Notes under the pieces: model-generated
The model's input: the letters and a program-made list of their open reading frames with translations, nothing else
What the model was told of the DNA's origin: nothing
Database searches by the model: none
From: Convolutriloba macropyga
Taxonomy: Eukaryota
Length of the DNA: 64,000 bases
Reading direction: 5' to 3'
Assembly: GCF_964194025.1 (NCBI RefSeq)
Contig: NC_134475.1
Coordinates: forward strand, 46,934,001-46,998,000
Program-made: the position numbers and the translations under genes
Part shown: in pieces, positions 1 through 31,158 of the stretch
Numbering within the stretch: the first letter of the stretch is position 1
Layout of the letters: each line of letters opens with the position of its first letter

Positions 1-440
1 CGTTTTTCCGTTTTACATGTCAAGATTTTCACGTTTGACTCGTGACTTACCCCACTCACTGTTTCAACTGAATGATTTTATTTCTTTCGCGCATTGAATT
101 ACGCAATGTAGTGAATATGGTTACTGTCAAAAGAGAAAAGTCAAAAGAAACGGGATAAACCGATAAAGACCTGGCATTAAGTCATTATGCATTAGGCTAT
201 CAACGTCCGTTGGAACGATTGATAACTGACATTAGTATTAAGCTTAATAGCTTTTAGTTAAAAGGCCGAATTAAGTATACTTTAAGAAAATAACTGAAAC
301 TGCACACCGAATTAGAACATTTTTTGAAACTTAGGAAAAAATTCTGTCATTTTCTCATTCTTCTTTTTTCTGTTTCCATACCGATGTGTGTCAAGCGCGT
401 CAACGGGGCTGTTTTCCGGCAATTTGCCGGCTATATTTCT
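1..440 (+). repeat. Dispersed repeat family C (3' part), ending in a GC-rich hairpin CCGGCAA-T-TTGCCGG
   Basis: Aligns by eye with 43255-43712 (+), 38945-39240 (-) and more weakly 39960-40240 (+). All copies end in ...ttccggcaatttgccggcta-like sequence. Confidence 0.8.
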
Positions 441-1372
441 TTCAATTTAATTCTTTAAACATATAGAAGTGCTTTAAAACATTTTGACTTCAAAATATTG
501 AAATCTTTTGGAAAAATTGTGTAACAGATTACAAATAGACGCTATTAGATGTCTCAAGTACTTACTGAACAAGAGGGTTTTTAATTCTTGTCAAGCGAAA
601 TGGCAACAATTATGTTCTCTTGGTTTACTAGACTCTGAGTAGCGGTTCACTGAAACTGTTTTGGAGACATCAATTCATGGTATGAAGGGCTGTTCTTAAT
701 CCTGACTGTTTCAACCCCCCTCAGTCACGCCCACCCCTCATCCACCCCACCCCCTAAGTCACTCCCTCCCATTCAACGTCCCTGAGTCCACCCTAATCCA
801 GCGGCCGATTTGGAGCACCCGCTCGTTCAGCCATCCCAACCCTACCGCCCCACACCCCTCGAAAATGGCGATTTGAACCCCATTTCGCCCAGCTCCCACA
901 ACCCTACCCTCCAATCGCTTTAACCTTCTCTCTATTCCTGTATCTCTATCTCTACTATCTCTAGGAGAACTATTTCTGCTGCCTCGGTGAGAATACCCGT
1001 TAGGTGATATGGATAGCCGCAAAATTATATATATGAAAATTGGCAACTGAAAAATAGGGGGAACTTGCATCTAACAAAAATGTATCCCTATTGAGTACCG
1101 CATCAAAAGTCTGTATCTTGTTCTGACCGCAGTTATTGGAAATTTTTGGTCACGTTTGTTTCCTTTCTTAAAGTTTGTTAGTTTTTTGTCCAGATGTTCT
1201 TAAATTGCTCGAAAACAAAGTTAGAGCAAAATAATTTTAACTTAATCTTTGTGTAATTTTTTGCTGGACTTTTCCATTGGCTTTGCGGCCTTGACTTCTT
1301 GCGGTTTAAAACTGTATCAGACTACAGTACAATCGAGGCCCTGCGAGTTGTTTGGGAGCAAGTTATGTTTTT

Positions 1373-3185
1373 AATTGCTCTTAAACGGAGTTTGTAGCAA
1401 TTATATTAGTCCTGTCGGTCTTTTTTTTTGCGATATTTCGCTTGACCGATTTTTCGTCTGACGCTTTTGACTTTTCGTCCTCAAATACGGGATAAACAGG
1501 TAGCGCCCAGCGGGCATTAAGTGCTCTTTGCGTCTTTCAGCTCTGTATCAGCTCAAACTGTTTTGGAGACGTATACTTATGGTGTGAAGGTCTTAGAAGT
1601 TGAAGACCCCTCCACTGTTGACCCCCACTATTACACCCATACCCCCCGCGCGCTGTTACCCCCTCCCCAACCCTGCTGTTTCCCCCCTTCAGCCCCCGGT
1701 GCACCCCTCTCCCCCCCCCCCCCCCCCCCGTTTCTACCTACTGACGAACAACCGCTTGTTAAAAACACGCAAATTTGTACTATTTTGCAATTTTTTCAAG
1801 CTTTTTGTAATTTTTTGACATTTTTTTGGTTTTTATTACTCCTAGGTGTCAAGGAACAAATAACCTCCTCTGGGTTTTAATAGTAGGTTACTGCAAAGTT
1901 TCTAGTGGTAATGGAATGGTCTCAACATTTTAACATCACGAATTTTAGCAGTTTTTTGACAAAACGTGCAAATTTTTTCAAATTATTTGGCATTTTTTTC
2001 CTTATTCAAGTCTTTCCAGAACTAGAGGTCAGAAAACATCCTAATGGTTTTGATAATAAGTTACTGACACATTTTTATTGGCCATGGAATAGTTTTTCAA
2101 CTTTTTAATGTCACAAATTTTAGCAATTTTTGATAAAACTTGCTTTCGGAGTTTTGTGATTTTTTCAGTCTCAAGAGCCATAGATCCTCCTCTAGGTTTT
2201 GAAACTTGCTTTCTGTTTAGTTTCTAGATTTAATGGAAAGTCTGGACAGATTTTAACATCACGAAGTTTAGCGTTTGACAATTCTTTCCATTTTCGATTT
2301 TTTTGACATGTATAGTCCTTGTTCAGGTTTTTAAGATTTAAGGGTTAGAAAAGCTCCGTAAGGGTTTTATAATAAATTATTGGAAAATTTTTGTGATCAT
2401 GGATTAACTTCCAATTTTTTAATATAACAAGCTTTAGCCGTTTCTTTTTATAGACCTTGCAAGTTTTTTGAAATTTGTCATTTTTAGGTTTCTCCAGTCA
2501 CGGAACTGCTTCTATGGTTTGATTATATGTTATTGCATAGTTTTTAGATGTAATGATTTTTTTCAAGATTTTATTATCGAATATATATAATTTAAGCATT
2601 TTTTAAATAAAGTTTGCAATTTTTTTGTTATTGAATTTTTTTTCGACACCAGGGGCCCTGGGACCCTGGTGATAATAAGCTGCTGTTTAGTTTCTATAGT
2701 TTTAAGGCTCCAGTTTTTGTAATTTTTGGATAAAATTTATAATTTTCAAATTTTTGGAAAAGTTTTATGTTGCAAGTATATTGATCTTTATGAGTCAGTG
2801 AAACTATTTCAGGCTTGAAACAGGGATACTGGATAGTCTCTTGAGACAATGAAATGTTTTGGAGACTTATACTTATGGTGTGAGGGGCGGTTCTTAGAAA
2901 TTGATCCCTTAGCTCCACCCCCGCTACCAACGTCAGTCCCCCCAACCCTGCACATCATTCAGGCCGTAAGGGCCTCGTGCAGCAAAGATCCCCCTCCCAC
3001 CGTTGCCCGCCCCCCACCCCCCCCCCCCCTCAATGTTGCACCATTCCCCCCTTCCCCCGCTGCGCTCACCTCACGCCCTTTAAATTGAGCTAATGCTAGC
3101 CTCACTAAACGGTGGCTAGCTACTGACGACGCCAACCGCTCGCCGGTCGTTTGAGAGCAATTTGCTCGACGTTAGTCGGTGTCGG
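1373..3185 (+). mobile_element. Non-autonomous Helentron/DINE-1-like element, family A
   Basis: T-run, then AATTGCTCTTAAACG (1373) with a partial inverted copy AGCAATT just downstream. Matching inverted CGTTTGAGAGCAATT at 3148-3162 is followed by the short hairpin CGAC-gtta-GTCG (3167-3178). Interior holds C-rich tracts and ~160-bp tandem repeats. Confidence 0.6.
1780..2820. repeat. Diverged ~150-175-bp tandem repeat inside the family A element
   Basis: A 'ggttttgataataagttactg...atggaa...ttttaacatcacgaa' type unit recurs near 1870, 2043, 2192, 2361, 2513 and 2668. Confidence 0.7.
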
Positions 3186-3540
3186 TTAGTTTCAATTCTT
3201 TTTTGCAATAACTTATCCGGAATAATTTGCAATCCATTTTTAATTTAGAGAAATCTCGTACTAAATTTTGCAACCTTCTGAACAATCATTTAGCTAATTT
3301 ATCAATTCAACATCTTTTTATACATAAAATGAACTCTAGTAGGAAGGACTTCTCAATTGGACTTCTGTTTTAGCTCCTCCAATGTAAAACTTTCTTTATG
3401 TAGACTTCGGACCCGACACTACATTTGTATACAAGCCAAGCCTGACTTGTTTGCAAATGTGGCTGAATGTATAACTACCTCAAAAAAACTACCGACCATG
3501 GCTCAATTTCAGTTTGATTACTGACGTTTCGTTTTCGTAC

Positions 3541-3567
3541 TCGCGCGAATAATGGTTATATAAAAAG
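3541..3567 (+). promoter_or_regulatory. Candidate HDAC8 core promoter (TCGCGCGA palindrome plus TATATAAAAAG)
   Basis: CpG-rich palindrome at 3541-3548 and TATA-like box at ~3557-3567, about 110 bp upstream of the ATG. Confidence 0.35.
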
Positions 3568-3674
3568 TTTTTGTTCCCTCATGCTATTGTTGGTTCCCCA
3601 AGCTAAAATGATATTTTACTGATACATTTTTGGTACATCATTTTAGTTAAATCGATGGTTAAAATGATATCGAA

Positions 3675-3981
3675 ATGAGTGTTGCTTACATTTATTCAAA
3701 ACGACTTGAACAGTTATCCGATGCTTTTACTAGATGTCACGGCAGAGCATCGCGTATCCATGAACTGATAACAGCTTATGGTCTACTGGATGCGACATCC
3801 ACAGATACACGAATAGTGTCTCCGAGAGCAGCACAACCTGAAGACTTAAAATATTTTCATGACAGTGATTTTGTTGACTTCCTCCTGAATTGCAATGAGA
3901 GATCGCGAGATGACGTGGAATTTGCGAAGGAATGCGAATTGTATGGATTGGAATTTGAATGCCCAGTCTTGGACGAGCTAG
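3675..3981 (+). CDS. HDAC8: HDAC8 coding exon 1
   Basis: MSVAYIYS...[13 protein letters not shown](G); donor G|GTCCGT at 3982, phase 1. Confidence 0.88.
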
Positions 3982-6900
3982 GTCCGTGAGACTAATTTGG
4001 TGTATCGTTGCTACACTTTGTTAGAAGCCAGGGATAATGAGTTAAAGGTGACATCAATTACCTTGAACTAGTATCGCTCAATGACGAATATTTGACCATG
4101 CGCTGATTTCTGTAAAGCCATCTAGAGACGTGTTATCTTGATAATTGTTTCTTTAATGAAACCATTGCATCGAGCTAATTTATTTCGGTGCGTCTAAGAA
4201 TTGAAGTAGTTTGGTTTAAATTTAGCTCCAGTAAGCCGTAAGGCTTTGAAGTTTGCTCCTGGTTACGAAAAGGATATTGAAGTTAATCATCTCAGGAGAT
4301 GCGAGGCTTTGAAGATTGAATTATGACAGCCGGTCATAAAGCCTTTGAAGGGGAACCATTAGCTAAATAATTGCGTTTGCGGTGTTTATAGGAGAGTATG
4401 TTCTGTTACTTGCTGGTGCAGCCCAAGATGCAGCTGAATGTCTCAAGTCAGGCATTGCCAAAATTGCAATCAATTGGTTCGGAGGGTGGCACCATTGTCG
4501 CAAGGACTACGCCGCAGGTAACGACCAAAATAACCACTGGTACTGTAAAGTCTTAAAATGTTTGGAGTTTGGTTTATTTGTGCGATTGGAAAATGGATAG
4601 TCTATGAGGATGAACTAGCGAACTAATATGAACCGTATGGAATGATTGCTCGCTCTTAGCAGTGCGTGATGATCAAGCTGATGGCATCTTTGTAGCAAAA
4701 TTCTTTATTTATTTCATGGTCTACGAACATTTTCTTGTTTTTGCAGGTTTCTGCTACATCAATGATTGCGTCCTGTCAATTCTACACCTCCTGAAGAAAT
4801 TTGAGAGAGTGTTGTACATTGATTTGGATGTACACCACGGAGACGGGGTGCAAGAGGCCTTCTATTGTACTAACAAAGTGTTCTCTCTTTCATTCCACAG
4901 ATACTCACCTGGACTGTTCTACCCCGGAACCGGTGATTTGAGGTGAGCAATGGCCAAGCTTTGCTAGAATTAGAGCCGGACGCGGTTCTTGACTACGAAA
5001 TAATTGAGTTAGCTACTGTTGCCGTCTTCTGTCGTTTTTTGCTGCTTTGAACGAGCAATATTTTTTTATCAGGTGCGAATTTTTCAAAGCGGTTTTTAGT
5101 TCAACTAAATTTTTCAGCCAAATTTGGTTTTGGCGATATTTTGAATTGATTGATTTTAATACTGAGGTATGTCTGTTAAAGAAAATCAATTAATTTTTTA
5201 TCAAATTTTGACTGTTTCCTTTTTATTGCCAATATCTTTCAGCTATTTGCAGTCTTATTTAGTATTTCATCTAGAGCTATTGGTTTGCTAATTCTACCAA
5301 GAAGTGACACTTCAAGTTTATACAGGGCCGCTTCCACTGAAATTGAATTTATACATTTGTAATTTTTGCACGGTTTTTGTTTGATTTTTAATTGTCCTTT
5401 AGTATGTCTCTGAAAGGAATTGGATGGGTCGCTGATCGGTCCTATGAATTTACAAAGGTTTTCTTAAGAACAATTGTTGTGGAAAAACCCTTGGCTTGTT
5501 GCGGGAATTTCTGCGATTTTTTATTTTAGTTTTTCCTTTTCCTCGGTTTTGTTGATACCGTTTCTCTTATTACGTTCTTTTGCCAACAGTTGAGTCGCAA
5601 CATGTTTTTAGTAAAATTTTTCATATAATTTTGTCGTCTGTTTTGATTATCAGATTTGTCTTTTCTTATGTTTGTATGTTAATGTTTCTGTTATTTATTT
5701 AAATTAATGTGTACTAAAGTAGGAAGTTCAGGAAATTAATTTCTCCTTTGAATCAGATCCGGAGTCTTCCGGCTGTTTTCTTTAGCTGAAGGTTTGTTGA
5801 TGGCTTGAACTTTTACTTCCTTGTAATAGAACATTGCCTGCCTACCCCCATTCATCCTAGTGGAACCCCCCTCCCAATGACCTACCCCCACCCCAAAACG
5901 AACTACCCCCCCCCCCCCACCTTACCTCCAAACTTACTTATCCCGCACCTACCCCCATCATCTTAGGACCACAGCCCCCATTAACTGCTCCCACACCCCT
6001 AAACTAAAAGCATTGTCTGCATTTTTTAAGTTCGCTTTTCGTTTGATTCGGCAGTTAATTTTTTTCGTCTCTTCTTTGATGCACCAGATTTGTTTTCGTT
6101 TGTGCCCCACACTTTAGTGGGTGCATATTGTTTGCACCCCCAGACGCACGTGCCATATTTTTAAATAATGTATTACTATGTAATGGCAGGTGTTGTGACT
6201 GGTGGAGGGCAGAAACGGAAAAAACATACAATGTTTGTGATATTGGTATTGTTAATTTAGAATTTGTTTTGTACACTCATTGACTCATTTTGCTTGACGG
6301 TTTCGTTTTGACTTTTCCTGTGACTTACGCCCTTTACTTTTTGCCTGATATAACTTTTTTCTCTCTTTAAGATTTTTTAGCAGCTGAAGTGGTGGCAGTT
6401 TAATACCAAAAGTAAATGAAAAAGGCACCAAAATTGTGTATGCAATTGGTATTCATCAGTATGCAATAAATTAAAAATCTAATGACGTCCTTTCAGTGAT
6501 TTTCTTAGTCTCCCAACCAACCAACCTAAAACGGGGTGAAAGTGCTATCCTTATCTGCCTAAAATGGGGAAACTATTAAAAAACAATTTTTCTTGATTAA
6601 ATTAAAATTGATTCGCTTATTCTAACCCTTGGGAATGCAGTTCTAGTATATTTTTTTCGGTTAATTTTGCATTTTAGGAAAAAATGTCAGGAAACACGAA
6701 TTTGTAGATTGATCTGAACTTTAATGTTCTCCAAGGCGTTGTTTGGGTTATAAAGCGGCTGTTAAAATTTTTGTTGAGAATATTTGTGAAATTTTACCTT
6801 TTCACATCTTTCTTTTTAATCCCTGCATCAGTCAGAGGCCAATCGCTTTAATTTTTTGAAAGTCTGCAAGCTGTGTGTTACACTTTTATTTTACACTACG

Positions 6901-9900
6901 ACAATTTGTCGAACGAAAATCAAAACCAGGAAGAATTTTATAGTGGTTTTCCATAACTTATTTTAAGAGAGCGAGAAAAGTAGGAGTGAATGCTATTTCC
7001 AGATGCTATTTTGTCATTTTGACAGTCTTCGAAAGTTTTTAAGCTCGTTTTTTGTTCCTCTCGACTTTACTTTTCAAGGGGATTTTTTAGATGCAACAGG
7101 CGCTTTTGGTGATTTTGTCGATGTTTTATTTTGATTGGTATCAATTTTCAATTGTTTGCATCATAAACCGAGAAGTGATCAACTACGGATACGTAACTCT
7201 ATATTAAGACATTAAGATTTTTTAAGCGAAGCTACTCTGACATCTCAGCTTTCTCTAAAAATTTTCCAAAAATCCTTGCCCAGTACATTAACTCTTAAGC
7301 TATTAACTAAAATAAAATTACATTAATGTTATTGGGCCTGAATGCCAATGGGATCTGTATTAATTTTGCTAATATGACACGACACCTAAAGTTATGCTCA
7401 ACTCTGGGCAAAAATTCTTGAATAACAAATTTTTATGGAAGCGCGTAGAATCAAAAACAGACAACCATTAAACAAAACCGCTACACGAAAATTTTAATAT
7501 TTCATTTCACTAAAAATGACGCAACCTGCAATTGTTGAATCTATGCTAAAGGTAACAGAAATAAAAAAACGATTAAGAAACCGGAAAAGATTTGAAACAA
7601 ACATATTCAAAGCCATGGCAACAATTAGCTATGGACTTAAACCTTTAAATAGCTTTATTTGTACCTCCAAAGCGAAAGGAAGTTGTGACCTGTCTTTATC
7701 CACAATATATCATAAGGCTACAAAAATGACGACAAATATAGACAAAAGTAAAAAAAAAATTCAATTAATTTGAAAACGGCATCGAAGCCGTTAAAACCAT
7801 TACCTAGTCATTACAAACCTTAAATATATTCAATTGCGATTTTTTTCAACGCCCTTGTTGTGATATGGGCTCTGTCATTAACGTAAAATTGCGAGAAGAC
7901 AAAGACAAATGTACAAAATAAAAAAATTACAAATGTACAAAATTAAAATTGCGAGAAGCGAGAAGACAAAGACAAATGTACAAAATTAAAAAAAAATGTA
8001 CAAAATGTACAAAATTCAAATTGTGAGAAGACAAAAACAAATGTACAAAAAAATGGAAAATTTACAAAAGAACTCAGTCTAAGCCAAAAAACCCTTTCTG
8101 AAAACGTACAACGAAGTGACCAGTTAACTTATGTTCACTAGAGATGCAACCTTGCTGCTGGTACTGAGCTTAAAGTTGACAGAAATAAGATAATAAAATT
8201 GGGAAAATCTCAAAAATTCATTTTTTGTTTTTGTGAACAAATACTTTTGGAAGTCATAAAAACTACGAGCTTTCAACTAAGAAAACTAAATAAATTGATC
8301 AAAAATTCGGAGAGTGTGAAACAAAACTTTAAGCTCGATAACTCCGTGGAAAAAACAAAATTCTTAAAAATCTTCATAATTCTATAGTCTACGGTGGATG
8401 TGATTTCTCATGATGCCACTCACGACTCTGTACGATGAATATATCGACCGGCCAAAATTGACTGAAAAAAAAACATTTGAGTATATAGTTCCTCCCCCAC
8501 CAAGGTGGGTTGGAACATTAAGTTTTTGATGCGAGGAATTAAGTTTTCCACAACTATTCCGTTTTAGCATGTGAATTGATCGCATTTGGTTTTGACTTTT
8601 ATTTGATTCCTATGATAAAATGTTAGTAAACATCACATGTCACTGAAAGTCATAGAAGTTGTAAATCAAAGATGGTTGTTTGAAATGTAAAAGGGCGGTA
8701 AGCACTAGGTATATAATTGGATCAAGATTTGTGCCTATTGCCACTGTTGTCACCCATCAAATCTGATTGAATTAGGTGATTAACAGATTTGTCTCTGCGT
8801 TCCGATTAACCGATAAAGCGCGCAAATGATTATTCCGTGCAAGATTTAGACGATTCATGTTTAGAGTGGCAGTTTTCGTTATTACTAGATTTCGCTTTCG
8901 TGTTCACATCGGCTCAAGTCTTTTGGATTGTTGCTGTCGCTGTCATATAAAGCATTCAATCTTTGACGGTTTCGGCAAAAATTACATTGTTAGTTGAACA
9001 CCGAAGATCAGAATTAGCCAGTTTATTGAATTTTCAGAAATAATGTGATACCGTTTGCAGATCGTAGCCGAGATCATTTTTACTTTTAAAGAGGCCGCTT
9101 GCTCTTTGAGCCCGTTTAATATATACCGTTCCGTCTCTGAGATGCAAAATTCTTTTTTCATCAAAATTCAAATCTTTACTGATATGTTCACAAATTTTGA
9201 CACCACGATAGTACTGTTTCCGTCAGATTTGCTCTGGGCAGTTCTTGGTTCTGCGAGTAAATCAGGCAATAACGGGTTGAGTTCAATAACGAGAGGGTAA
9301 CCTATGAGGCTATTGAAATGTGTACCTCCTCAACTTGAGCACCCATTGATTGTGTTACGGTAATTACTGTTGAAGTTTCCTGACAGGATTCTTCAGGGCT
9401 ATTGCTAGCTAGATGTTCCTATGATTTCACCATTTTTTTCTTCTATTATAAACTTCGTGAAGTTCTGTTTAGTATAGAGTTACAGATATAAATAGATTGC
9501 ATTTGGATCATTTCATTTTATTTCACAATTCCGCATGATCCTCCTGTTTTAGCGAGATTGGAAGCTACAAAGGTTTCAACTACTCTCTAAACGTTCCATT
9601 CCATGAAGGTCTCAAAAATGAACCATTTATGCGAGTGAGTTCTACAATTGTTGAGCAAGTGGTGGCGGCTTTTCAGCCGGACGCCATCGTATGTCAATGT
9701 GGTGCAGATTCCTTGGCTCATGATCCGGTCCAGGGTCTCAATCTGACTTCAATTGCTTACGTTGATGTAAGTCAGAGTTGTTTCGAAAAAGAATTTTATT
9801 GGAACAGTTAGCTGAAAATTTTACACTGTTGTCTTGCTACACCCGAACTTGCCAAATTATCTGATCTAGCGAGAAGTGCGAATATCGCAAATTTTACGGC

Positions 9901-10423
9901 CATCAATGTCTATTTTCAGGATGTGTTAAAAGGAGAGACGTATTCCGTGCAATTGAAATGATTATCTATTCGATTTCTAGATTGCTCAAAGGAGATTTAG
10001 ATGAGCGCCTTTCTGAATGTGAGTTTCATGAGATCTGCCCACAATTGAACAAATTTATTGGCCATAATAAGTTTGTTCGCGAAAAATTGTAATATGTACA
10101 TGGGTTTGGAAATAGTGGTTTTGACTTCTTAGGTAGTGAGAAAGATCCGGAAGTTGGATTTGCCATTACTAGTCCTAGGAGGCGGAGGATATCACAGAAG
10201 CAATACAGCAAGGTGCTGGTCATCTATTCAAGCGGAACTGGTCAATAAATGGCCTCTCGTTGAAGACATTCCGGAACACGAGTATCTTGACGAATATGGA
10301 CCGTGCTACAGTTTAGAGATCAAAGAATCAAAAATGAAAGATTTAAATTCTGAGCAGCATTTGAATGAAATTGTTGAGAAATGTGGAAAAATTTTAAGCA
10401 AAATAGCCAAACCCGGTTGCTAA
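3675..10423 (+). CDS. HDAC8: Histone deacetylase 8 (class I), join(3675..3981,4392..4517,4747..4942,9553..9766,10133..10423), 377 aa
   Basis: All four introns are GT-AG with compatible phases; total 1134 nt. Motifs RASxxHxLI, YGLxxx[10 protein letters not shown] (Trp typical of HDAC8), [28 protein letters not shown] and LGGGGY. Confidence 0.93.
4392..4517 (+). CDS. HDAC8: HDAC8 coding exon 2
   Basis: Acceptor tttatAG|; encodes EYVLLLAG...[15 protein letters not shown]; donor G|GTAAC. Confidence 0.9.
4747..4942 (+). CDS. HDAC8: HDAC8 coding exon 3
   Basis: Acceptor tttgcAG|; encodes GFCYIND...DLDVHHGDG...PGTGDL; donor AG|GTGAGC. Confidence 0.92.
7200..8517 (-). mobile_element. Family B non-autonomous element, reverse orientation, in HDAC8 intron 3 (left boundary approximate)
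   Basis: 8330-8516 is the reverse complement of the family B 5' end (gttcc-accc/ac..gtggggg-aggaactatatactcaaatg...tcagtcaattttggccg). The block is A-rich on +, against a T-rich background. Confidence 0.6.
7885..8070. repeat. Irregular short tandem/mosaic repeat (gcgagaagacaaagacaaatgtacaaaat)
   Basis: Three to four shuffled copies of gagaagacaaa and aaatgtacaaaa units. Confidence 0.75.
8543..8815 (+). mobile_element. 5'-truncated solo LTR of the copia family found at 58480-63732
   Basis: Shares actattccgtttt..catgtgaattgat, gtaaacatcacatgtca, gatcaagatttgtgcctattgccactg and gatttgtctctgcgtt. Ends ...ttaaccGATA at 8815 with no PBS after it. Confidence 0.85.
9553..9766 (+). CDS. HDAC8: HDAC8 coding exon 4
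   Basis: Acceptor gttttAG|; encodes [16 protein letters not shown]...[11 protein letters not shown]...AYVD; donor |GTAAGT. Confidence 0.9.
10133..10423 (+). CDS. HDAC8: HDAC8 coding exon 5
   Basis: Acceptor cttcttAG|; encodes [21 protein letters not shown]...[12 protein letters not shown]; TAA stop. Confidence 0.9.
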   Translation, partial: VVRKIRKLDLPLLVLGGGGYHRSNTARCWSSIQAELVNKWPLVEDIPEHEYLDEYGPCYSLEIKESKMKDLNSEQHLNEIVEKCGKILSKIAKPGC

Positions 10424-10699
10424 AAACTCTGCTTTAATTTGAGATTTCTCCTTTTTGATCTTATTTGTTTATTGAATGATAGTTTTTAGCTGAATTTTCA
10501 TAAGAACGGCGTGGAATTAAGATAAACATGTATAAGTAATATCGCCAACCACAAATTTAAGGTTATTGTATCAAACAGCGTGAACAATTTTTCTTGCGCG
10601 GAAAATACTTGATGTCTTTTCCCGGTAGGACTGTGGTCTATTTGAAGTAAAAAAATATTCTTAATTGTAGAAAAGATTTGTTGAATTTTCAGATTAGAA

Positions 10700-13600
10700 A
10701 TGCCATCTACAATAGACATAACAATCAAAACTCTCGACGGCAACTCGAGGAAGTTCGAGAACATCTCAAATGAAATTACAGTCAAGGAATTGAAAGAGAA
10801 AATTGCCAGTAGAGTCAACATTCCAGCAGACAAGCAGCGACTTATTTATGCTGGACGTGTTTTAAATGACAGCAATGTTTTGTCCTCGTATAACTTGGAT
10901 GGTCAAGCGATTCATTTAGTAGAAAGACAACCAGTTTCGAATCAACCAAATGCATCGTCATCGAGTGCGTCTGGTCCTAACGTGAATAATCCAAATGTGC
11001 GACCTCCATTGGGTAGGTCTGGAAGGCCAAATCCAAACATGCCCAGAACACAAATACGAATGGTGTTTGGAGGTAACCAGGCTCCTGGTTTTATACGACC
11101 AGGAGCTCCTGGAGTGCCTCCGTTTCCTCCGCCTAGAGGACCCCCCAGATTTATGCCACAGAATGGAGGAACTGTGCGATTCAGGGTCCCGAGACCACCG
11201 ATTGTGAGCAACGCTGGTCGTCCAGCAGCAACTCCAGTAGATGCAGGATCTAATCGCGTGGAACATTGTCGAAAGTATATTGCGAGTACGAAACACGTTT
11301 TGAGACATTTGAAGCGACTGAAAGATAGAATGAGTAATCTGGAAGAGTCAACCTCGGAATCCTCAACAACAACTCAGGAAGATTTGGAGATACCAGCTGA
11401 ACCAGAAGTTGCTACTGCTCAAACAAACGAACAGTTAGATGACGGAACTGCCTCAAGTGGTGCTCCTTCAAATCAAACTGAGGAAACAAATTCACAAGCT
11501 GAAGGAACGGAAAATGCTCAGCAACAGTCGCCAAATGGTGCCAACGGTGAAACTGGCAACGGACGAAGAAATCGAAGATTGCCTAGAGCCTATCCAGCGG
11601 CAGAGATAATTTCTTTGCATCGAAATGTGAATGACTGCGAACGTGAGTTGCAGGAATACGTCGATTTATGTGAAAACATTTTTTCGTCATCTGACGTCGA
11701 GCAGGCCCAGAATGTGCAACATATGCACAATGTATTAATACATGGAATTGGGGAAGCAACTCATTTTTTGGCACATGCTCAACATTCCTTGTCTGATTTG
11801 TACACAAACTTATCACATCGTCCGCCTGTTGCGTTGGCTCATCCAGTGCCAGTAAACGCAGTTGCAGCTACTGCTATCGAGATTGCTCCCGTACTAGTAA
11901 ATGCCAATGGTGCTGCAATCCCTATTCCACCTATGAACATGGGTGCTCCTCCAGGGCCACCCCCAGCTGGTGGTCCCGGGAATGCTGACCAACAAGCAGC
12001 CAATATGGCCCCGAACTCGAACAACTCAGGTTCCAATCAAAACTCGACATCAACTCCGAACAACACCCCGAACCCCAATCAAGCAAATTTCAATCCTCGA
12101 ATGCCGCAGATGCCGCCGTTCATTCCTACTTTTGCTGCTCCTATTTTCAACATGCCGCCGGGAGCGATTCCTACTGTAATACCTGGACCGTTTCCCAACA
12201 TGGTTCCAGGCGCTTTTCCAAATTTGGCTCCAGGTGCTTTTCCGAATATGGGCCCTGGTCAGATTCCAGTTAATGTTCAGAGGTTCACTGTTCCTGGAAG
12301 CAACGATACAATTTTCAGAGCTGCATTTCGAGCTGGTGTGCCTCGTGGAAACCCCGCGGCTTCACAGCCAACAAATGGAAATCAGAGTACTACGACTGCA
12401 CAAAGGGGAACTCCAAATGTTGTTCCCAATCCGACAGAACAGACCGATGCTTCGAGTTCTACAGATGCGCGCCCCGAAGCGGCTCAAAATAACCAATCTG
12501 ATGCTTCACAACAAGCAGCAATGCCTGGCCAACCAAGATTTCCAATTCGTCCTGAAGTTTTTGGACCCCGAGATCCTTTTGTGCCTTGCAACTCAAGATT
12601 TTTCCAGCCGCGGCCTCCTAGAGGTGCTACAGGTGGAGCAAATGCGAGTGCTGCTTCGCAGCAGCCAAATGGCAGCAACAATACAACAAGTGCTGGTGCG
12701 TCCCAGAATGCGAATGAAAACGTGACAGCTGAACAGCAAACGACTGATCAAAACGCGAGTGTGGGAAATCAAGTCAACATGGGTGGGTTGGGGCTTGACC
12801 TGCAGAATATTCTGCAAAGCATGGCTGCAGCTAACCCAGGAATCAACTTAGAAATGAACGAAGACACAGTTGCTGTTGATCCTAACCGACCCATCGGAGA
12901 GCAAATTCAGGATATCATCAACAGTGTCATGTCTGCAACTGCGCCTGGGGGAACTGGGTTTGGTGGCAACTCGGAGGAGAATTTTGGCGATGTGCAAACT
13001 GATGTCCAAGTCAATCTGGAAGCCCAATTTGGTGATCCGATGGAGGATGGGTCCTATTCAGATGAGCATGACTTTTATGGTTCTGGAGATATTCCAGACC
13101 AACAGCCAGTTCCTCCAAACCCACTTCATTCAATGATGGCTGGCTTTCTTCAATCGGGAATGGGTAATCCCCAAACTAACTTGTTTGATCTGCTCCAAAT
13201 GGGCCAGGAACAGGCTAGTGGTATACTGAATGACATTGCTGTCGTATTTGCGAGATCAATTTCAGTACCTGAACTTTTTGCAATTTTGTCCGGCCAAACT
13301 CCAGCTTTGGCACAGGTACGAACGCCTTTGCGAGAGTTTGTGCAGCAAAGTGTTCTAAGAGGGGAAGGTTACTCGGAAGATTTGTTGCAACGTCGAATAA
13401 GTGAGTCAATTCGAGGAGATCATAGTTTTGAACTTCTAAATGTTCAATTCAACGAAACTGTCAACGGACAGGAATCGCTGTTTAGATTCTTGGAACAACG
13501 TGTTTTTGAGCTTCTCCAGCTGACAATGAACGATGAAGTTGGTGATAACGAGTTCGCACAAAATGTAACTACATTTTTTAGCAATTTCATGTTCGAGATG

Positions 13601-14530
13601 ATTGTCCTATACACGAACATTCTGCATTCATCTCAAAGAGTGGAATCGGTGCTCGCAAACACCTTAATGAGTGACTTCTTACGAACTCAGAGTCGAAGTG
13701 CTGATAACGAGTCTTCAGATAACCGACAGCCACCAACTTTTATGGGCATGAACATATCTGGCATGGAGCCTATGATCACAATGTTAGTGTCTCAACAATT
13801 GAGTAATCTTGCTTCAATGGCTTCAAGTCGAGTTCCTCTCTCGCAAGTTGAACAGTTTATAGTGAGACGAGACCAGCCGATGACTCAACAGCCGAACTCA
13901 GCGAGTCAAAATGTGGAACCGAAATCAGAGCCTATGGATTGTTCGGAGGGAAGCTCTATCGGAGTTGCTAACTCTGGGACGAATCAATCTACTAATTTAA
14001 GTGATGGTGCTTCGCAAAGTAAACAACAACAACCTGTTAGACCTAAAGTTAAACAACCCTTGAGGGCTCAAAATAGCCACGCTAGGCTTAGTTTCAATGT
14101 TTTGTTGCCAGACGAGCCAGAATCAATGAACAGTATTTTCGACACAAATACAGTAAATGAGGCGACAGAAAATTGGCTGGAAGTTTTGAAAAATGATGAG
14201 CAGAAACAAAATGAAGAGAGTTTCCCTGATTATTTCAGCGACGCTTATTTATTTGGCATGCCGCCAAGACAGAGAGCTATGGCGACATCAACCAATGCGT
14301 TGGGGTATGAGGGATCAATGCGAGGAATTCTGGAAGGAACGCTGCAACGTATGAGTTCTGGAAGCAGTGTGAACGAGGCAACTAGGGTAGCGTTACGAGA
14401 CAGTATTGAAGATGATGAAAATTTACAAGAGCTTTTTGCCAATGTCGTCAGACAAGATATTGCGAGAAGATATGATAATGATCCCGATATGCAGAATAGA
14501 CCATCAACCAAAAAGTATTTGGGCAAATAA
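10700..14530 (+). CDS. BAG6: Large proline-rich protein BAG6 (BAT3/Scythe), single coding exon, 1276 aa
   Basis: N-terminal ubiquitin-like domain (ITIKTLD...QRLIYAGRVLND...IHLVER). BAG6 motif GEATHFLAHAQHSLSDL, long P/Q/N-rich region and DPFVPCNS. C-terminal SDAYLFGMP and DIARRYDNDPD (BAG-similar tail). Confidence 0.9.
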   Translation: MPSTIDITIKTLDGNSRKFENISNEITVKELKEKIASRVNIPADKQRLIYAGRVLNDSNVLSSYNLDGQAIHLVERQPVSNQPNASSSSASGPNVNNPNVRPPLGRSGRPNPNMPRTQIRMVFGGNQAPGFIRPGAPGVPPFPPPRGPPRFMPQNGGTVRFRVPRPPIVSNAGRPAATPVDAGSNRVEHCRKYIASTKHVLRHLKRLKDRMSNLEESTSESSTTTQEDLEIPAEPEVATAQTNEQLDDGTASSGAPSNQTEETNSQAEGTENAQQQSPNGANGETGNGRRNRRLPRAYPAAEIISLHRNVNDCERELQEYVDLCENIFSSSDVEQAQNVQHMHNVLIHGIGEATHFLAHAQHSLSDLYTNLSHRPPVALAHPVPVNAVAATAIEIAPVLVNANGAAIPIPPMNMGAPPGPPPAGGPGNADQQAANMAPNSNNSGSNQNSTSTPNNTPNPNQANFNPRMPQMPPFIPTFAAPIFNMPPGAIPTVIPGPFPNMVPGAFPNLAPGAFPNMGPGQIPVNVQRFTVPGSNDTIFRAAFRAGVPRGNPAASQPTNGNQSTTTAQRGTPNVVPNPTEQTDASSSTDARPEAAQNNQSDASQQAAMPGQPRFPIRPEVFGPRDPFVPCNSRFFQPRPPRGATGGANASAASQQPNGSNNTTSAGASQNANENVTAEQQTTDQNASVGNQVNMGGLGLDLQNILQSMAAANPGINLEMNEDTVAVDPNRPIGEQIQDIINSVMSATAPGGTGFGGNSEENFGDVQTDVQVNLEAQFGDPMEDGSYSDEHDFYGSGDIPDQQPVPPNPLHSMMAGFLQSGMGNPQTNLFDLLQMGQEQASGILNDIAVVFARSISVPELFAILSGQTPALAQVRTPLREFVQQSVLRGEGYSEDLLQRRISESIRGDHSFELLNVQFNETVNGQESLFRFLEQRVFELLQLTMNDEVGDNEFAQNVTTFFSNFMFEMIVLYTNILHSSQRVESVLANTLMSDFLRTQSRSADNESSDNRQPPTFMGMNISGMEPMITMLVSQQLSNLASMASSRVPLSQVEQFIVRRDQPMTQQPNSASQNVEPKSEPMDCSEGSSIGVANSGTNQSTNLSDGASQSKQQQPVRPKVKQPLRAQNSHARLSFNVLLPDEPESMNSIFDTNTVNEATENWLEVLKNDEQKQNEESFPDYFSDAYLFGMPPRQRAMATSTNALGYEGSMRGILEGTLQRMSSGSSVNEATRVALRDSIEDDENLQELFANVVRQDIARRYDNDPDMQNRPSTKKYLGK

Positions 14531-14548: not shown

Positions 14549-14554
14549 AATAAA
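14549..14554 (+). promoter_or_regulatory. Candidate BAG6 polyadenylation signal AATAAA
   Basis: AATAAA 18 nt after the stop, followed by T/GT-rich sequence. Confidence 0.5.
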
Positions 14555-14719
14555 TTACTGCTGAAAACTATTATCTTTAAATTGATTTATCTGATTGCTG
14601 TTTTTTTTGGATGCAGGGATATAAAAATTCATTTATGTTGTTGGAGACCTTCATTGAATTGAATTGATATTTATCTTTTCTTGATAACTGTTTTCAAAAG
14701 TTTACAACCTCTTTTTCTT

Positions 14720-14960
14720 TGGGGGGGGGGGGGATTGGAACTACGTGCTCAACTACGGGATTGGAACTATGAACAGGGTTTTTGTTCATTCATTTTTGGC
14801 CAATCGATTTATATGACGTAGAAAGAAATGAGGGGTATCATGAAAGCCCTGAATTTCGTCTTTTTCCAAGAGTTATCCAGGTTTAAACTTCACCAACATT
14901 TGGCATTTTACCGTTATTTTGTTCACTTTATGCGTTATTCTCGACCAATTTTTAATAATT
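14720..14960 (+). repeat. Diverged family B 5' end
   Basis: gggg..ggaactat..ttttgttcattcatttttggccaatcgat..gtagaaagaaatgaggggtatcatgaaagc matches 18722-18960. Confidence 0.6.
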
Positions 14961-30927: not shown

Positions 30928-31158
30928 ATGCCAGTTGTATCCAACATGGAAGAATTTATGGAGGCAGTGGAGGATTTCTTCTCAGAGAATCCAGAGAGAA
31001 CTAGAGTGACTATGAAGTACAGACACTGTGACGCAAAACTAACTCTCAAGGTCACTGACGATTATAAAGTAGCCCAATATAAAACGGGAAATCTGATGGA
31101 TGTGAAAAAGGTGGAGAAGATGGCAAGTCAAACTATTCGAGCAATGGCTACAAAGTGA
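30928..31158 (+). CDS. SRP9: Signal recognition particle 9 kDa protein, single coding exon, 76 aa
   Basis: MPVVSNMEEFMEAVEDFFSENPERTRVTMKYRHCDAKLTLKVTDD..AQYKT....DVKKVEK matches the SRP9 pattern. The ATG is at 30928; the ORF track starts at an upstream TTG. Confidence 0.93.
   Translation: MPVVSNMEEFMEAVEDFFSENPERTRVTMKYRHCDAKLTLKVTDDYKVAQYKTGNLMDVKKVEKMASQTIRAMATK

What the first reader, a model, noticed from the sequence alone, without database searches (positions are those of the whole stretch)
10424..10699. HDAC8-BAG6 look like an operon-style (dicistronic / SL trans-spliced) pair
Seen: genes in this window are otherwise 7-16 kb apart and introns reach 10 kb, yet BAG6 starts 276 bp after the HDAC8 stop on the same strand. 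The gap is free of the repeat families seen elsewhere and has no AATAAA/ATTAAA. A strong TTTTCAG acceptor (10686-10692) sits 7 nt before the BAG6 ATG. Known: short intercistronic gaps ending in an unpaired acceptor define SL-resolved operons in nematodes, tunicates and flatworms. Inference: a polycistronic pre-mRNA resolved by trans-splicing. Alternative: a tiny own promoter (GCGCGGAAAA at ~10596) plus a 68-nt 5'UTR intron from the GT at 10625.
Basis: partly seen in the sequence, partly recalled or inferred. Interest (0 to 1): 0.7.

Follow-up and report, generated by a model that had tools for sequence, protein, structure and literature searches.

The report
Candidate HDAC8-BAG6 operon in an acoel
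In the acoel worm Convolutriloba macropyga the BAG6 gene starts only 276 bases after the HDAC8 gene, with a conserved splice-acceptor site 7 bases before its start codon; this is the layout of a two-gene operon resolved by spliced-leader trans-splicing, but no RNA data could be reached to prove it.

Summary
HDAC8 stops at 10421-10423 and an intronless BAG6 ORF starts at 10700. The 276-nt gap is unique in the genome, has no AATAAA/ATTAAA on the + strand, and carries TTTTCAG at 10686-10692.

The genome is Convolutriloba macropyga (acoel). It holds more than 1,200 copies of the published acoel spliced leader followed by GT. Where I looked, these lie in 1,261-nt repeats shared with 5S rRNA genes.

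Two other acoel-like assemblies keep HDAC8 > BAG6 > SRP9 on one strand. Their HDAC8-BAG6 gaps are 146 and 166 nt, and a pyrimidine tract plus YAG ends exactly 7 nt before the ATG in all three species.

No RNA evidence was reachable. The runs found behave as DNA, and no acoel transcript contig was found. Leader addition at 10693 (my estimate about 0.8) and co-transcription with HDAC8 (about 0.5) are therefore inferred, not shown.

The scan has already noted at least eight similar operon candidates elsewhere in this genome. This is another member of a known kind, in a phylum where I found no published operon.

The parts
3675..10423 (+). HDAC8-like class I histone deacetylase gene, five coding exons (approximately 3675-3981, 4392-4518, 4747-4943, 9553-9766, 10133-10423)
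   Evidence: Pfam Hist_deacetyl hits exon by exon. PDB hits to HDAC8. Splice sites read from the sequence and reading frames. The same exons occur in the same order in L014 and L024. The spliced protein was not joined or searched as one piece.
10133..10423 (+). Last HDAC8 exon, ending with stop codon TAA at 10421-10423
   Evidence: It is 52-59% identical to the ORFs directly upstream of BAG6 in L014 and L015.
10424..10699 (+). Intergenic (candidate intercistronic) gap: 276 nt, 30% GC, unique in the genome
   Evidence: No Rfam match and no fold signal, z = 0.14. The second haplotype has 275 nt.
10646..10651 (+). AGTAAA, a variant poly(A)-signal candidate for HDAC8, 41 nt before the acceptor AG. 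Present in both haplotypes. Its function is inferred only.
   Evidence: It aligns with TGAAATA blocks in the two other species, but that alignment is weak.
10676..10692 (+). T-rich tract and 3' splice site TTTTCAG (AG at 10691-10692): the candidate spliced-leader acceptor
   Evidence: YAG sits at the same offset (-9 to -8 from the ATG) in L014, L023, L015 and L024, each preceded by a pyrimidine tract. The two haplotypes of species B differ TAG/CAG, both valid acceptors.
10693..10699 (+). ATTAGAA, the 7-nt genomic 5'UTR stub that would follow the leader (predicted 5'UTR = 31-nt leader + 7 nt)
   Evidence: ATTAGAA, ATTCGAA and ATTGAAA in the three species. There is an in-frame TGA 18 nt upstream of the ATG.
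10700..14530 (+). BAG6 homologue: intronless, 1,276 aa, N-terminal ubiquitin-like domain plus BAG6 domain
   Evidence: Best named hits are animal BAG6 proteins. It is also intronless in L014 and L015.
14549..14554 (+). Canonical AATAAA, 19 nt after the BAG6 stop codon
   Evidence: The BAG6 genes of the two other species also have AATAAA downstream (about 220 nt after the stop).
10625..10630 (+).
   Evidence: Present in both haplotypes but not conserved in species B or C. It is weaker than the confirmed HDAC8 donors GTAACG, GTGAGC and GTAAGT.

Best explanation
HDAC8 and BAG6 form a two-gene unit of the spliced-leader (SL) operon type.

Proposed mechanism:
1. Transcription starts upstream of HDAC8. 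A TATA-like box lies at 3557-3564.
2. Transcription runs through the 276-nt gap into BAG6.
3. The HDAC8 mRNA is cleaved and polyadenylated inside the gap, possibly directed by AGTAAA at 10646.
4. The 31-nt acoel spliced leader is trans-spliced onto the acceptor AG at 10691-10692.
5. This gives a capped BAG6 mRNA whose 5'UTR is the leader plus ATTAGAA.

Shown here:
- The gene layout.
- The SL RNA genes of this genome.
- Conservation of the acceptor and of the short gap in three species.

Inferred, with my estimates:
- Leader addition at 10693: about 0.8.
- Co-transcription from the HDAC8 promoter: about 0.5.
- The position of the HDAC8 3' end: no estimate.
For: 1. The organism trans-splices. 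The window lies in the C. macropyga assembly: 1,175,981,408 bases and 4,694 scaffolds, matching PMC13650328.
   - The leader published for the acoel S. roscoffensis (PMC9911081) occurs 2,612 times with 3 or fewer mismatches, against 0 for the control pattern.
   - In 12 sampled copies it is fused to many different downstream sequences, with ATGs often only a few bases after it.
   - Leader + GT occurs 1,274 times. In the 4-kb stretch I fetched, it lies in 1,261-nt repeats with a GTAAGT/GTAATT donor, downstream stem-loops and a 5S rRNA gene.
2. The acceptor is conserved. A pyrimidine tract plus YAG ends exactly 7 nt before the BAG6 ATG in C. macropyga and in two other acoel-like assemblies. Their BAG6 is only 33-34% identical to this one and 71% identical to each other. 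The rest of the gap does not align better than shuffled sequence.
3. The gap stays short: 276/275, 146/145 and 166/166 nt. By contrast:
   - The BAG6-SRP9 spacer is 16.4, 9.5 and 3.3 kb in the three species.
   - That spacer appears to be about 10 kb shorter in the second C. macropyga haplotype (estimated from blastn blocks).
   - 146 nt leaves little room for a 3'UTR, a poly(A) site, a separate promoter and an outron.
4. Species C has no GT[AG] anywhere in its gap, so its acceptor has no conventional partner donor there.
5. Species C has ATTAAA 64 nt before the acceptor AG, a typical operon spacing.
Against: - No RNA evidence at all. The four runs that hold the stretch cover intron, gap and intergenic DNA alike and show no spliced joint, so they behave as DNA.
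- Three protein word searches found no acoel transcript contig.
- There is no leader-headed retrocopy of BAG6 in the genome.
- A conserved acceptor just upstream of the ATG is also seen for SRP9, 3-16 kb away from BAG6. The acceptor says 'trans-spliced', not 'operon'.
- Microsynteny is conserved beyond the tight pair, so adjacency alone is not special.
- The gap is a small target, so freedom from transposons is expected by chance.
- No canonical poly(A) hexamer for HDAC8 in C. macropyga or species B.
- TATA-like TATAAG at 10532-10537 and several GT[AG] sites exist in the C. macropyga gap, so an internal promoter cannot be excluded.
- Non-conservation of the gap is uninformative about promoters, because the control region upstream of SRP9 is equally unalignable.
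Confidence: 0.5

Rival explanations
1. BAG6 is SL trans-spliced at 10693 but has its own promoter, in the gap or inside the 3' part of HDAC8 (last intron or exon). The two genes are then close neighbours, or a 'hybrid' arrangement, and not a true operon.
For: - In the related S. roscoffensis about 30% of genes are trans-spliced, and that paper reports no operons.
- SRP9 has the same kind of acceptor while lying kilobases from its upstream neighbour.
- TATAAG at 10532-10537 and a GC-rich GCGCGGAAAA at 10596-10605 could be promoter pieces.
Against: - Neither motif is conserved in species B or C.
- Gaps of 146 and 166 nt must also hold the HDAC8 3'UTR and poly(A) site.
- The genome is not compact: 1.18 Gb, with neighbouring spacers of 3-16 kb.
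Confidence: 0.3
2. One reading: a tiny promoter in the gap, a short non-coding first exon, and a 68-nt cis-spliced 5'UTR intron from GT 10625 to AG 10692, with no trans-splicing.
For: GTAGGA at 10625 is present in both haplotypes, with GCGCGGAAAA about 25 nt upstream.
Against: - The donor is not conserved.
- Species C has no GT[AG] in its gap, yet keeps the acceptor.
- 68 nt is far shorter than the four HDAC8 introns seen here (228 nt to 4.6 kb).
- The donor is weaker than the confirmed ones.
Confidence: 0.07
3. The conserved CAGATT just before the ATG is an initiator-like transcription start, not a splice site. BAG6 mRNA would then begin about 9 nt before the ATG.
For: TCAGAT resembles an initiator core (TCAGTY; from general knowledge, not tested here). 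The block is conserved in three species.
Against: - A 9-nt 5'UTR is very short for scanning initiation.
- The motif is preceded in all three species by a pyrimidine tract, as at 3' splice sites.
- The TAG/CAG polymorphism in species B keeps the YAG rule.
- No conserved TATA-like element lies about 30 nt upstream.
Confidence: 0.05

Closest known systems
SL-resolved operons of nematodes (C. elegans type)
   Same: Same-strand genes a few hundred bases or less apart. A 3' splice site without a local donor lies just upstream of the downstream ATG. A leader is donated by tandem SL RNA genes linked to 5S rRNA genes.
   Different: No operon-specific second leader (SL2) is known or was seen here. The upstream gene lacks a canonical AAUAAA in two of three species. 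Co-transcription is not shown.
Operons of chaetognaths, tunicates and flatworms (for example Paraspadella gotoi, PMC12460157; Ciona; Schistosoma)
   Same: A single leader class serves both operon and non-operon genes. Operons are defined operationally by short spacing (less than 250 bp in PMC12460157) plus leader reads. The gaps in species B and C (146 and 166 nt) meet that distance rule.
   Different: The C. macropyga gap (276 nt) is just over that threshold, and leader reads are missing here. This is a different phylum (Xenacoelomorpha), for which I found no published operon.
SL trans-splicing in the acoel Symsagittifera roscoffensis (PMC9911081)
   Same: The leader sequence is identical. 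About 30% of genes are trans-spliced there, so a leader on BAG6 would be ordinary.
   Different: That paper does not describe operons: the word does not occur in it.

Membership tests
SL-resolved metazoan operon | The organism has SL RNA genes and performs SL trans-splicing | tested here: met
   - 1,274 copies of leader + GT.
- 1,261-nt repeats with a GTAAGT donor, stem-loops and 5S rRNA in a 4-kb sample.
- Leader fused to diverse sequences at dispersed sites.
- The leader is identical to the published S. roscoffensis leader.
SL-resolved metazoan operon | Two or more same-strand genes separated by a short intercistronic region (roughly 0-400 nt) | tested here: met
   The gap is 276 nt here, 275 nt in the second haplotype, and 146/145 and 166/166 nt in two other species.
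SL-resolved metazoan operon | The downstream gene has a 3' splice site upstream of its ATG with no partner donor (an outron-type acceptor) | tested here: inconclusive
   The acceptor motif is conserved at -9 to -8 from the ATG in three species. Species C has no GT[AG] in its gap, but the C. macropyga gap has nine GT[AG] sites, including GTAGGA at 10625. Whether any of them is used needs RNA data.
SL-resolved metazoan operon | The mature downstream mRNA carries the leader at that acceptor | not testable with these tools
   The runs found behave as DNA. No acoel transcript contigs were found. There is no leader-BAG6 retrocopy.
SL-resolved metazoan operon | A single promoter and a polycistronic precursor covering both genes | not testable with these tools
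   No RNA, TSS or chromatin data were reachable. A TATA-like box lies upstream of HDAC8 at 3557-3564 and no conserved promoter motif is seen in the gap, but the conservation control is uninformative.
SL-resolved metazoan operon | The 3' end of the upstream gene is formed inside the intercistronic region | tested here: inconclusive
   There is no A[AT]TAAA in the C. macropyga or species B gap. AGTAAA is at 10646. Species C has ATTAAA 64 nt before the acceptor AG.
BAG6 (large proline-rich protein BAG6/BAT3/Scythe) | N-terminal ubiquitin-like domain plus BAG6 domain in a protein of about 1,100-1,300 aa, rich in proline and low-complexity sequence | tested here: met
   Pfam PF00240 (1.5e-17) and PF12057 (3.4e-10). 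Best named hits are animal BAG6 proteins.
HDAC8 (class I histone deacetylase 8) | Class I deacetylase domain that ends shortly after the catalytic core, without the long C-terminal tail of HDAC1/2/3 | tested here: inconclusive
   - The Hist_deacetyl domain is found on four exons.
- The last exon scores best on HDAC8 chains (55 bits, against 52 for Rpd3 and 48 for HDAC1) and aligns up to chain residue 366-367 of the 377-residue HDAC8 chain.
- The catalytic exon does not discriminate between the classes.
- No tree was built.

The most novel reading that the evidence does not exclude
HDAC8-BAG6 is a true operon conserved across at least three acoel species. That would make it, with the other candidates noted in this genome, the first operon evidence for Xenacoelomorpha. 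A bolder variant: HDAC8 lacks a canonical poly(A) hexamer in two of three species, so its 3' end might be set by coupling to downstream trans-splicing at the pyrimidine tract, as in trypanosomes, and not by a hexamer.
Probability: 0.45. Interest if true: 0.6.

Novelty: new member of a known kind. Interest (0 to 1): 0.4.

Why it matters
SL-resolved operons are known from nematodes, tunicates, flatworms, chaetognaths and rotifers, and are thought to have arisen several times. Acoels belong to Xenacoelomorpha, a lineage placed near the base of Bilateria. Trans-splicing is published for one acoel, but I found no published operon.

A pair that stays 146-276 nt apart in three acoel species, in genomes otherwise swollen by transposons, is a concrete and cheaply testable case. 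The genome project's own directional poly(A) RNA-seq would settle leader addition. Long reads would settle co-transcription.

If this and the other candidates in the genome hold, operons would be an additional feature of acoel genome organisation, and annotation pipelines would have to take them into account.

Tried and rejected
1. RNA evidence from public runs. Four runs from one study hold the stretch. Their contigs cover the HDAC8 intron, the gap and intergenic DNA at even depth and show no spliced joint, so I treat them as DNA. The 22-nt 'joints' 10394>14712 and 14090>14712 are too short-sided to mean anything.
2. Transcript contigs through the protein collection. Queries with BAG6 residues 1-300, the full length and residues 1-100 found only genomic ENA contigs of three species and no acoel RNA contig. 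L016, a Logan RNA contig, is a distant BAG6 with a 265-nt leaderless 5'UTR and is not informative.
3. A leader-headed retrocopy of BAG6 that would have recorded the junction. None exists; the gap and the 5' part of BAG6 are single-copy.
4. The published 32-nt leader + GT gave no hit. The leader exon is 31 nt and ends ...AAATAG, followed by GT. Dispersed leader + GT copies are retrocopies, not genes.
5. 'No conserved promoter in the gap'. Species B and C gaps do not align better than shuffles, but the control upstream of SRP9 does not either. I dropped this argument.
6. A non-coding RNA or a structured element in the gap. No Rfam hit and fold z = 0.14.
Exons were searched one by one.
8. The large representative protein search was not used.

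Full report
**What is there**

- A class I histone deacetylase gene with five coding exons (about 3675-10423) ends with TAA at 10421-10423.
- Its last exon is 10133-10423. This rests, and on exon-by-exon Pfam hits.
- That exon scores best on HDAC8 chains and ends where HDAC8 ends, although the margin over Rpd3/HDAC1 is small.
- 276 nt downstream on the same strand, a single 1,276-aa ORF (10700-14530) encodes a ubiquitin-like domain plus a BAG6 domain. Its best named relatives are animal BAG6 proteins.
- TTTTCAG lies at 10686-10692, 7 nt before the ATG.
- The + strand has no A[AT]TAAA between 10244 and 14549.
- The gap is single-copy in the genome. It has no Rfam match and no unusual folding (z = 0.14).

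- Absence of the hexamer from 276 nt has a chance of about 0.5 at this window's density, and the variant AGTAAA sits at 10646-10651.
- An acceptor-like Y4NYAG ends within 30 nt upstream of 6.4% of all ATGs in the window.

**Which organism, and does it trans-splice**

The genome has 1,175,981,408 bases in 4,694 scaffolds, and the chromosome carrying the window is 68.6 Mb. These figures match the Convolutriloba macropyga genome note: span 1,175.98 Mb, 4,694 scaffolds, N50 68.62 Mb (PMC13650328). Earlier notes of this scan had named the species, and this confirms it independently.

The spliced leader published for the acoel Symsagittifera roscoffensis (PMC9911081) occurs 2,612 times here with 3 or fewer mismatches, against 0 for the control pattern.
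- In 12 dispersed copies I sampled, it is fused to many different downstream sequences, often with an ATG only a few bases after it.
- Leader + GT occurs 1,274 times, many of them in clusters on scaffold 9.
- A 4-kb sample of that cluster shows a 1,261-nt repeat. Each unit has the 31-nt leader exon, a GTAAGT/GTAATT donor, downstream stem-loops, and a 5S rRNA gene on the other strand.

This is the classical SL RNA / 5S arrangement. The machinery for SL trans-splicing is therefore present.

**Comparative evidence**

The protein word search found BAG6 genes in two other ENA assemblies.
- Species B is ERZ25074608, loci L014 and L023.
- Species C is ERZ26859043, loci L015 and L024.
- Both are intronless as here, 33-34% identical to the C. 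macropyga protein and 71% identical to each other.

In both species the ORF directly upstream of BAG6 is the last HDAC8 exon (52-59% identity). The other HDAC8 exons lie further upstream, and a single-exon SRP9 gene lies downstream on the same strand.

| Spacing | C. macropyga | Species B | Species C |
|---|---|---|---|
| HDAC8-BAG6 gap, two haplotypes | 276 / 275 nt | 146 / 145 nt | 166 / 166 nt |
| BAG6-SRP9 spacer | 16.4 kb | 9.5 kb | 3.3 kb |

The BAG6-SRP9 spacer also appears to be about 10 kb shorter in the second C. macropyga haplotype. That figure is estimated from blastn blocks.

The gap sequences do not align better than shuffled sequence. Even so, all three species end the gap the same way, with a pyrimidine tract, YAG, seven bases and then the ATG:
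- C. macropyga: ttttcag|attagaaATG
- Species B: cttgtag|attcgaaATG, or cttgcag|attcgaaATG in its other haplotype
- Species C: gttacag|attgaaaATG

. The TAG/CAG polymorphism in species B keeps the YAG rule. This is good evidence for a functional 3' splice site at 10692.

**Cis or trans**

A 68-nt intron would also be much shorter than the four HDAC8 introns (228 nt to 4.6 kb), and its donor is weaker than three of the four HDAC8 donors (GTAACG, GTGAGC, GTAAGT).

In a species that trans-splices, with leader junctions typically a few bases before the ATG, the simplest reading is that the leader is added at 10693. I put that at about 0.8.

**Operon, or just a close neighbour**

Here the evidence is indirect.

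*For an operon:*
- 146-166 nt must hold the HDAC8 3'UTR, its poly(A) site and cleavage site. That leaves almost no room for a separate promoter and outron, in genomes that are otherwise far from compact.
- Species C has ATTAAA 64 nt before the acceptor AG, and C. macropyga has AGTAAA 41 nt before it.
- HDAC8 has a TATA-like box at 3557-3564 upstream of its start, while no conserved promoter motif is seen in the gap.

*Against, or neutral:*
- SRP9 also carries a conserved acceptor 16-25 nt before its ATG, although it lies kilobases from BAG6. The acceptor therefore marks trans-splicing, not an operon.
- Gene order is conserved beyond the tight pair.
- A 150-280-nt gap is a small target for insertions anyway.
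- The lack of sequence conservation in the gap says nothing about promoters, because the region upstream of SRP9 is just as unalignable between B and C. By contrast, the BAG6 3'UTR is 83% identical between them.
- The C. macropyga gap has a TATA-like TATAAG at 10532-10537.

I put co-transcription at about 0.5. An own promoter with trans-splicing comes to about 0.3, the cis-intron model to about 0.07, and an initiator-type start at the conserved CAGATT to about 0.05.

**What could not be done**

- The run search returned four runs from one study. Their contigs cover intron, gap and intergenic DNA evenly and contain no spliced joint, so they are DNA.
- The genome note says a directional poly(A) RNA-seq library exists, but it was not among the runs served.
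- Three protein word searches found no acoel transcript contig.
- The genome has no leader-headed BAG6 retrocopy.
- The spliced HDAC8 protein was not joined. Exons were searched singly.

**Comparison with what is known, and novelty**

The layout is that of SL-resolved operons of nematodes, tunicates, flatworms and chaetognaths. Species B and C meet the less-than-250-bp operational criterion used for chaetognaths (PMC12460157); C. macropyga is just over it. SL trans-splicing in acoels is published (PMC9911081), but that paper does not mention operons. My literature searches found no operon report for Xenacoelomorpha.

Earlier notes of this scan list at least eight similar candidates elsewhere in this genome. 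I did not check those. This pair is therefore one more candidate member of a known kind, in a new phylum. It is well supported by comparative anatomy but unproven at the RNA level.

**Scores:** interest 0.4; novelty: new member of a known kind.

Noticed in passing
window 30928-31158 (+); L024 16840-17073; L014 22990-23223: A single-exon SRP9 gene lies downstream of BAG6 on the same strand in all three species. A conserved acceptor (TTTCAG) sits 16-25 nt before its ATG. The spacing to BAG6 is 16.4, 3.3 and 9.5 kb. BAG6 and SRP9 both act in protein targeting to the ER membrane. Whether SRP9 belongs to the same transcription unit is unknown.
   Followed up: partly
L026 = G000:C9:23192600-23196600, within clusters at about 23.1-23.7 Mb: The true SL RNA genes lie in a 1,261-nt repeat. 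Each unit pairs the 31-nt leader exon (donor GTAAGT/GTAATT, downstream stem-loops) with a 5S rRNA gene on the opposite strand. Leader + GT occurs 1,274 times genome-wide.
   Followed up: partly
window 3557-3567 and 3640-3646: A TATA-like box (TATATAAAAAG) lies about 110 nt upstream of the HDAC8 ATG. A TTTTAG acceptor lies 28 nt upstream of it, so HDAC8 itself may receive the leader. Two out-of-frame upstream ATGs (3655, 3664) lie between that acceptor and the start codon.
   Followed up: no
window 14719-14915: A short stretch about 190 nt after the BAG6 stop has a summed contig depth of 230-6,000 in the four runs, against about 4-60 around it. Many loose ends occur at 14779 and 14812. This is a high-copy repeat that begins with a G run. 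The second haplotype has a shorter version.
   Followed up: no
window 7317; 16.2-22.3 kb; about 22.3-29.7 kb (compared with L025): The second C. macropyga haplotype has a 2.65-kb insertion in HDAC8 intron 3 at 7317. It appears to lack much of the repeated DNA between BAG6 and SRP9, including one of two 1.9-2.3-kb duplicate blocks. Contigs of runs X1, X2 and X4 also depart from the window upstream of 9408.
   Followed up: partly
L014 9991 versus L023 (same site): The two haplotypes of species B differ at position -3 of the BAG6 acceptor (TAG versus CAG). Both are valid 3' splice sites.
   Followed up: yes
L014 13508-13767 versus L015 13502-13761: The BAG6 3'UTR is 83% identical between species B and C (z = 19), although the gap upstream of BAG6 cannot be aligned. 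This suggests a constrained 3'UTR element.
   Followed up: no
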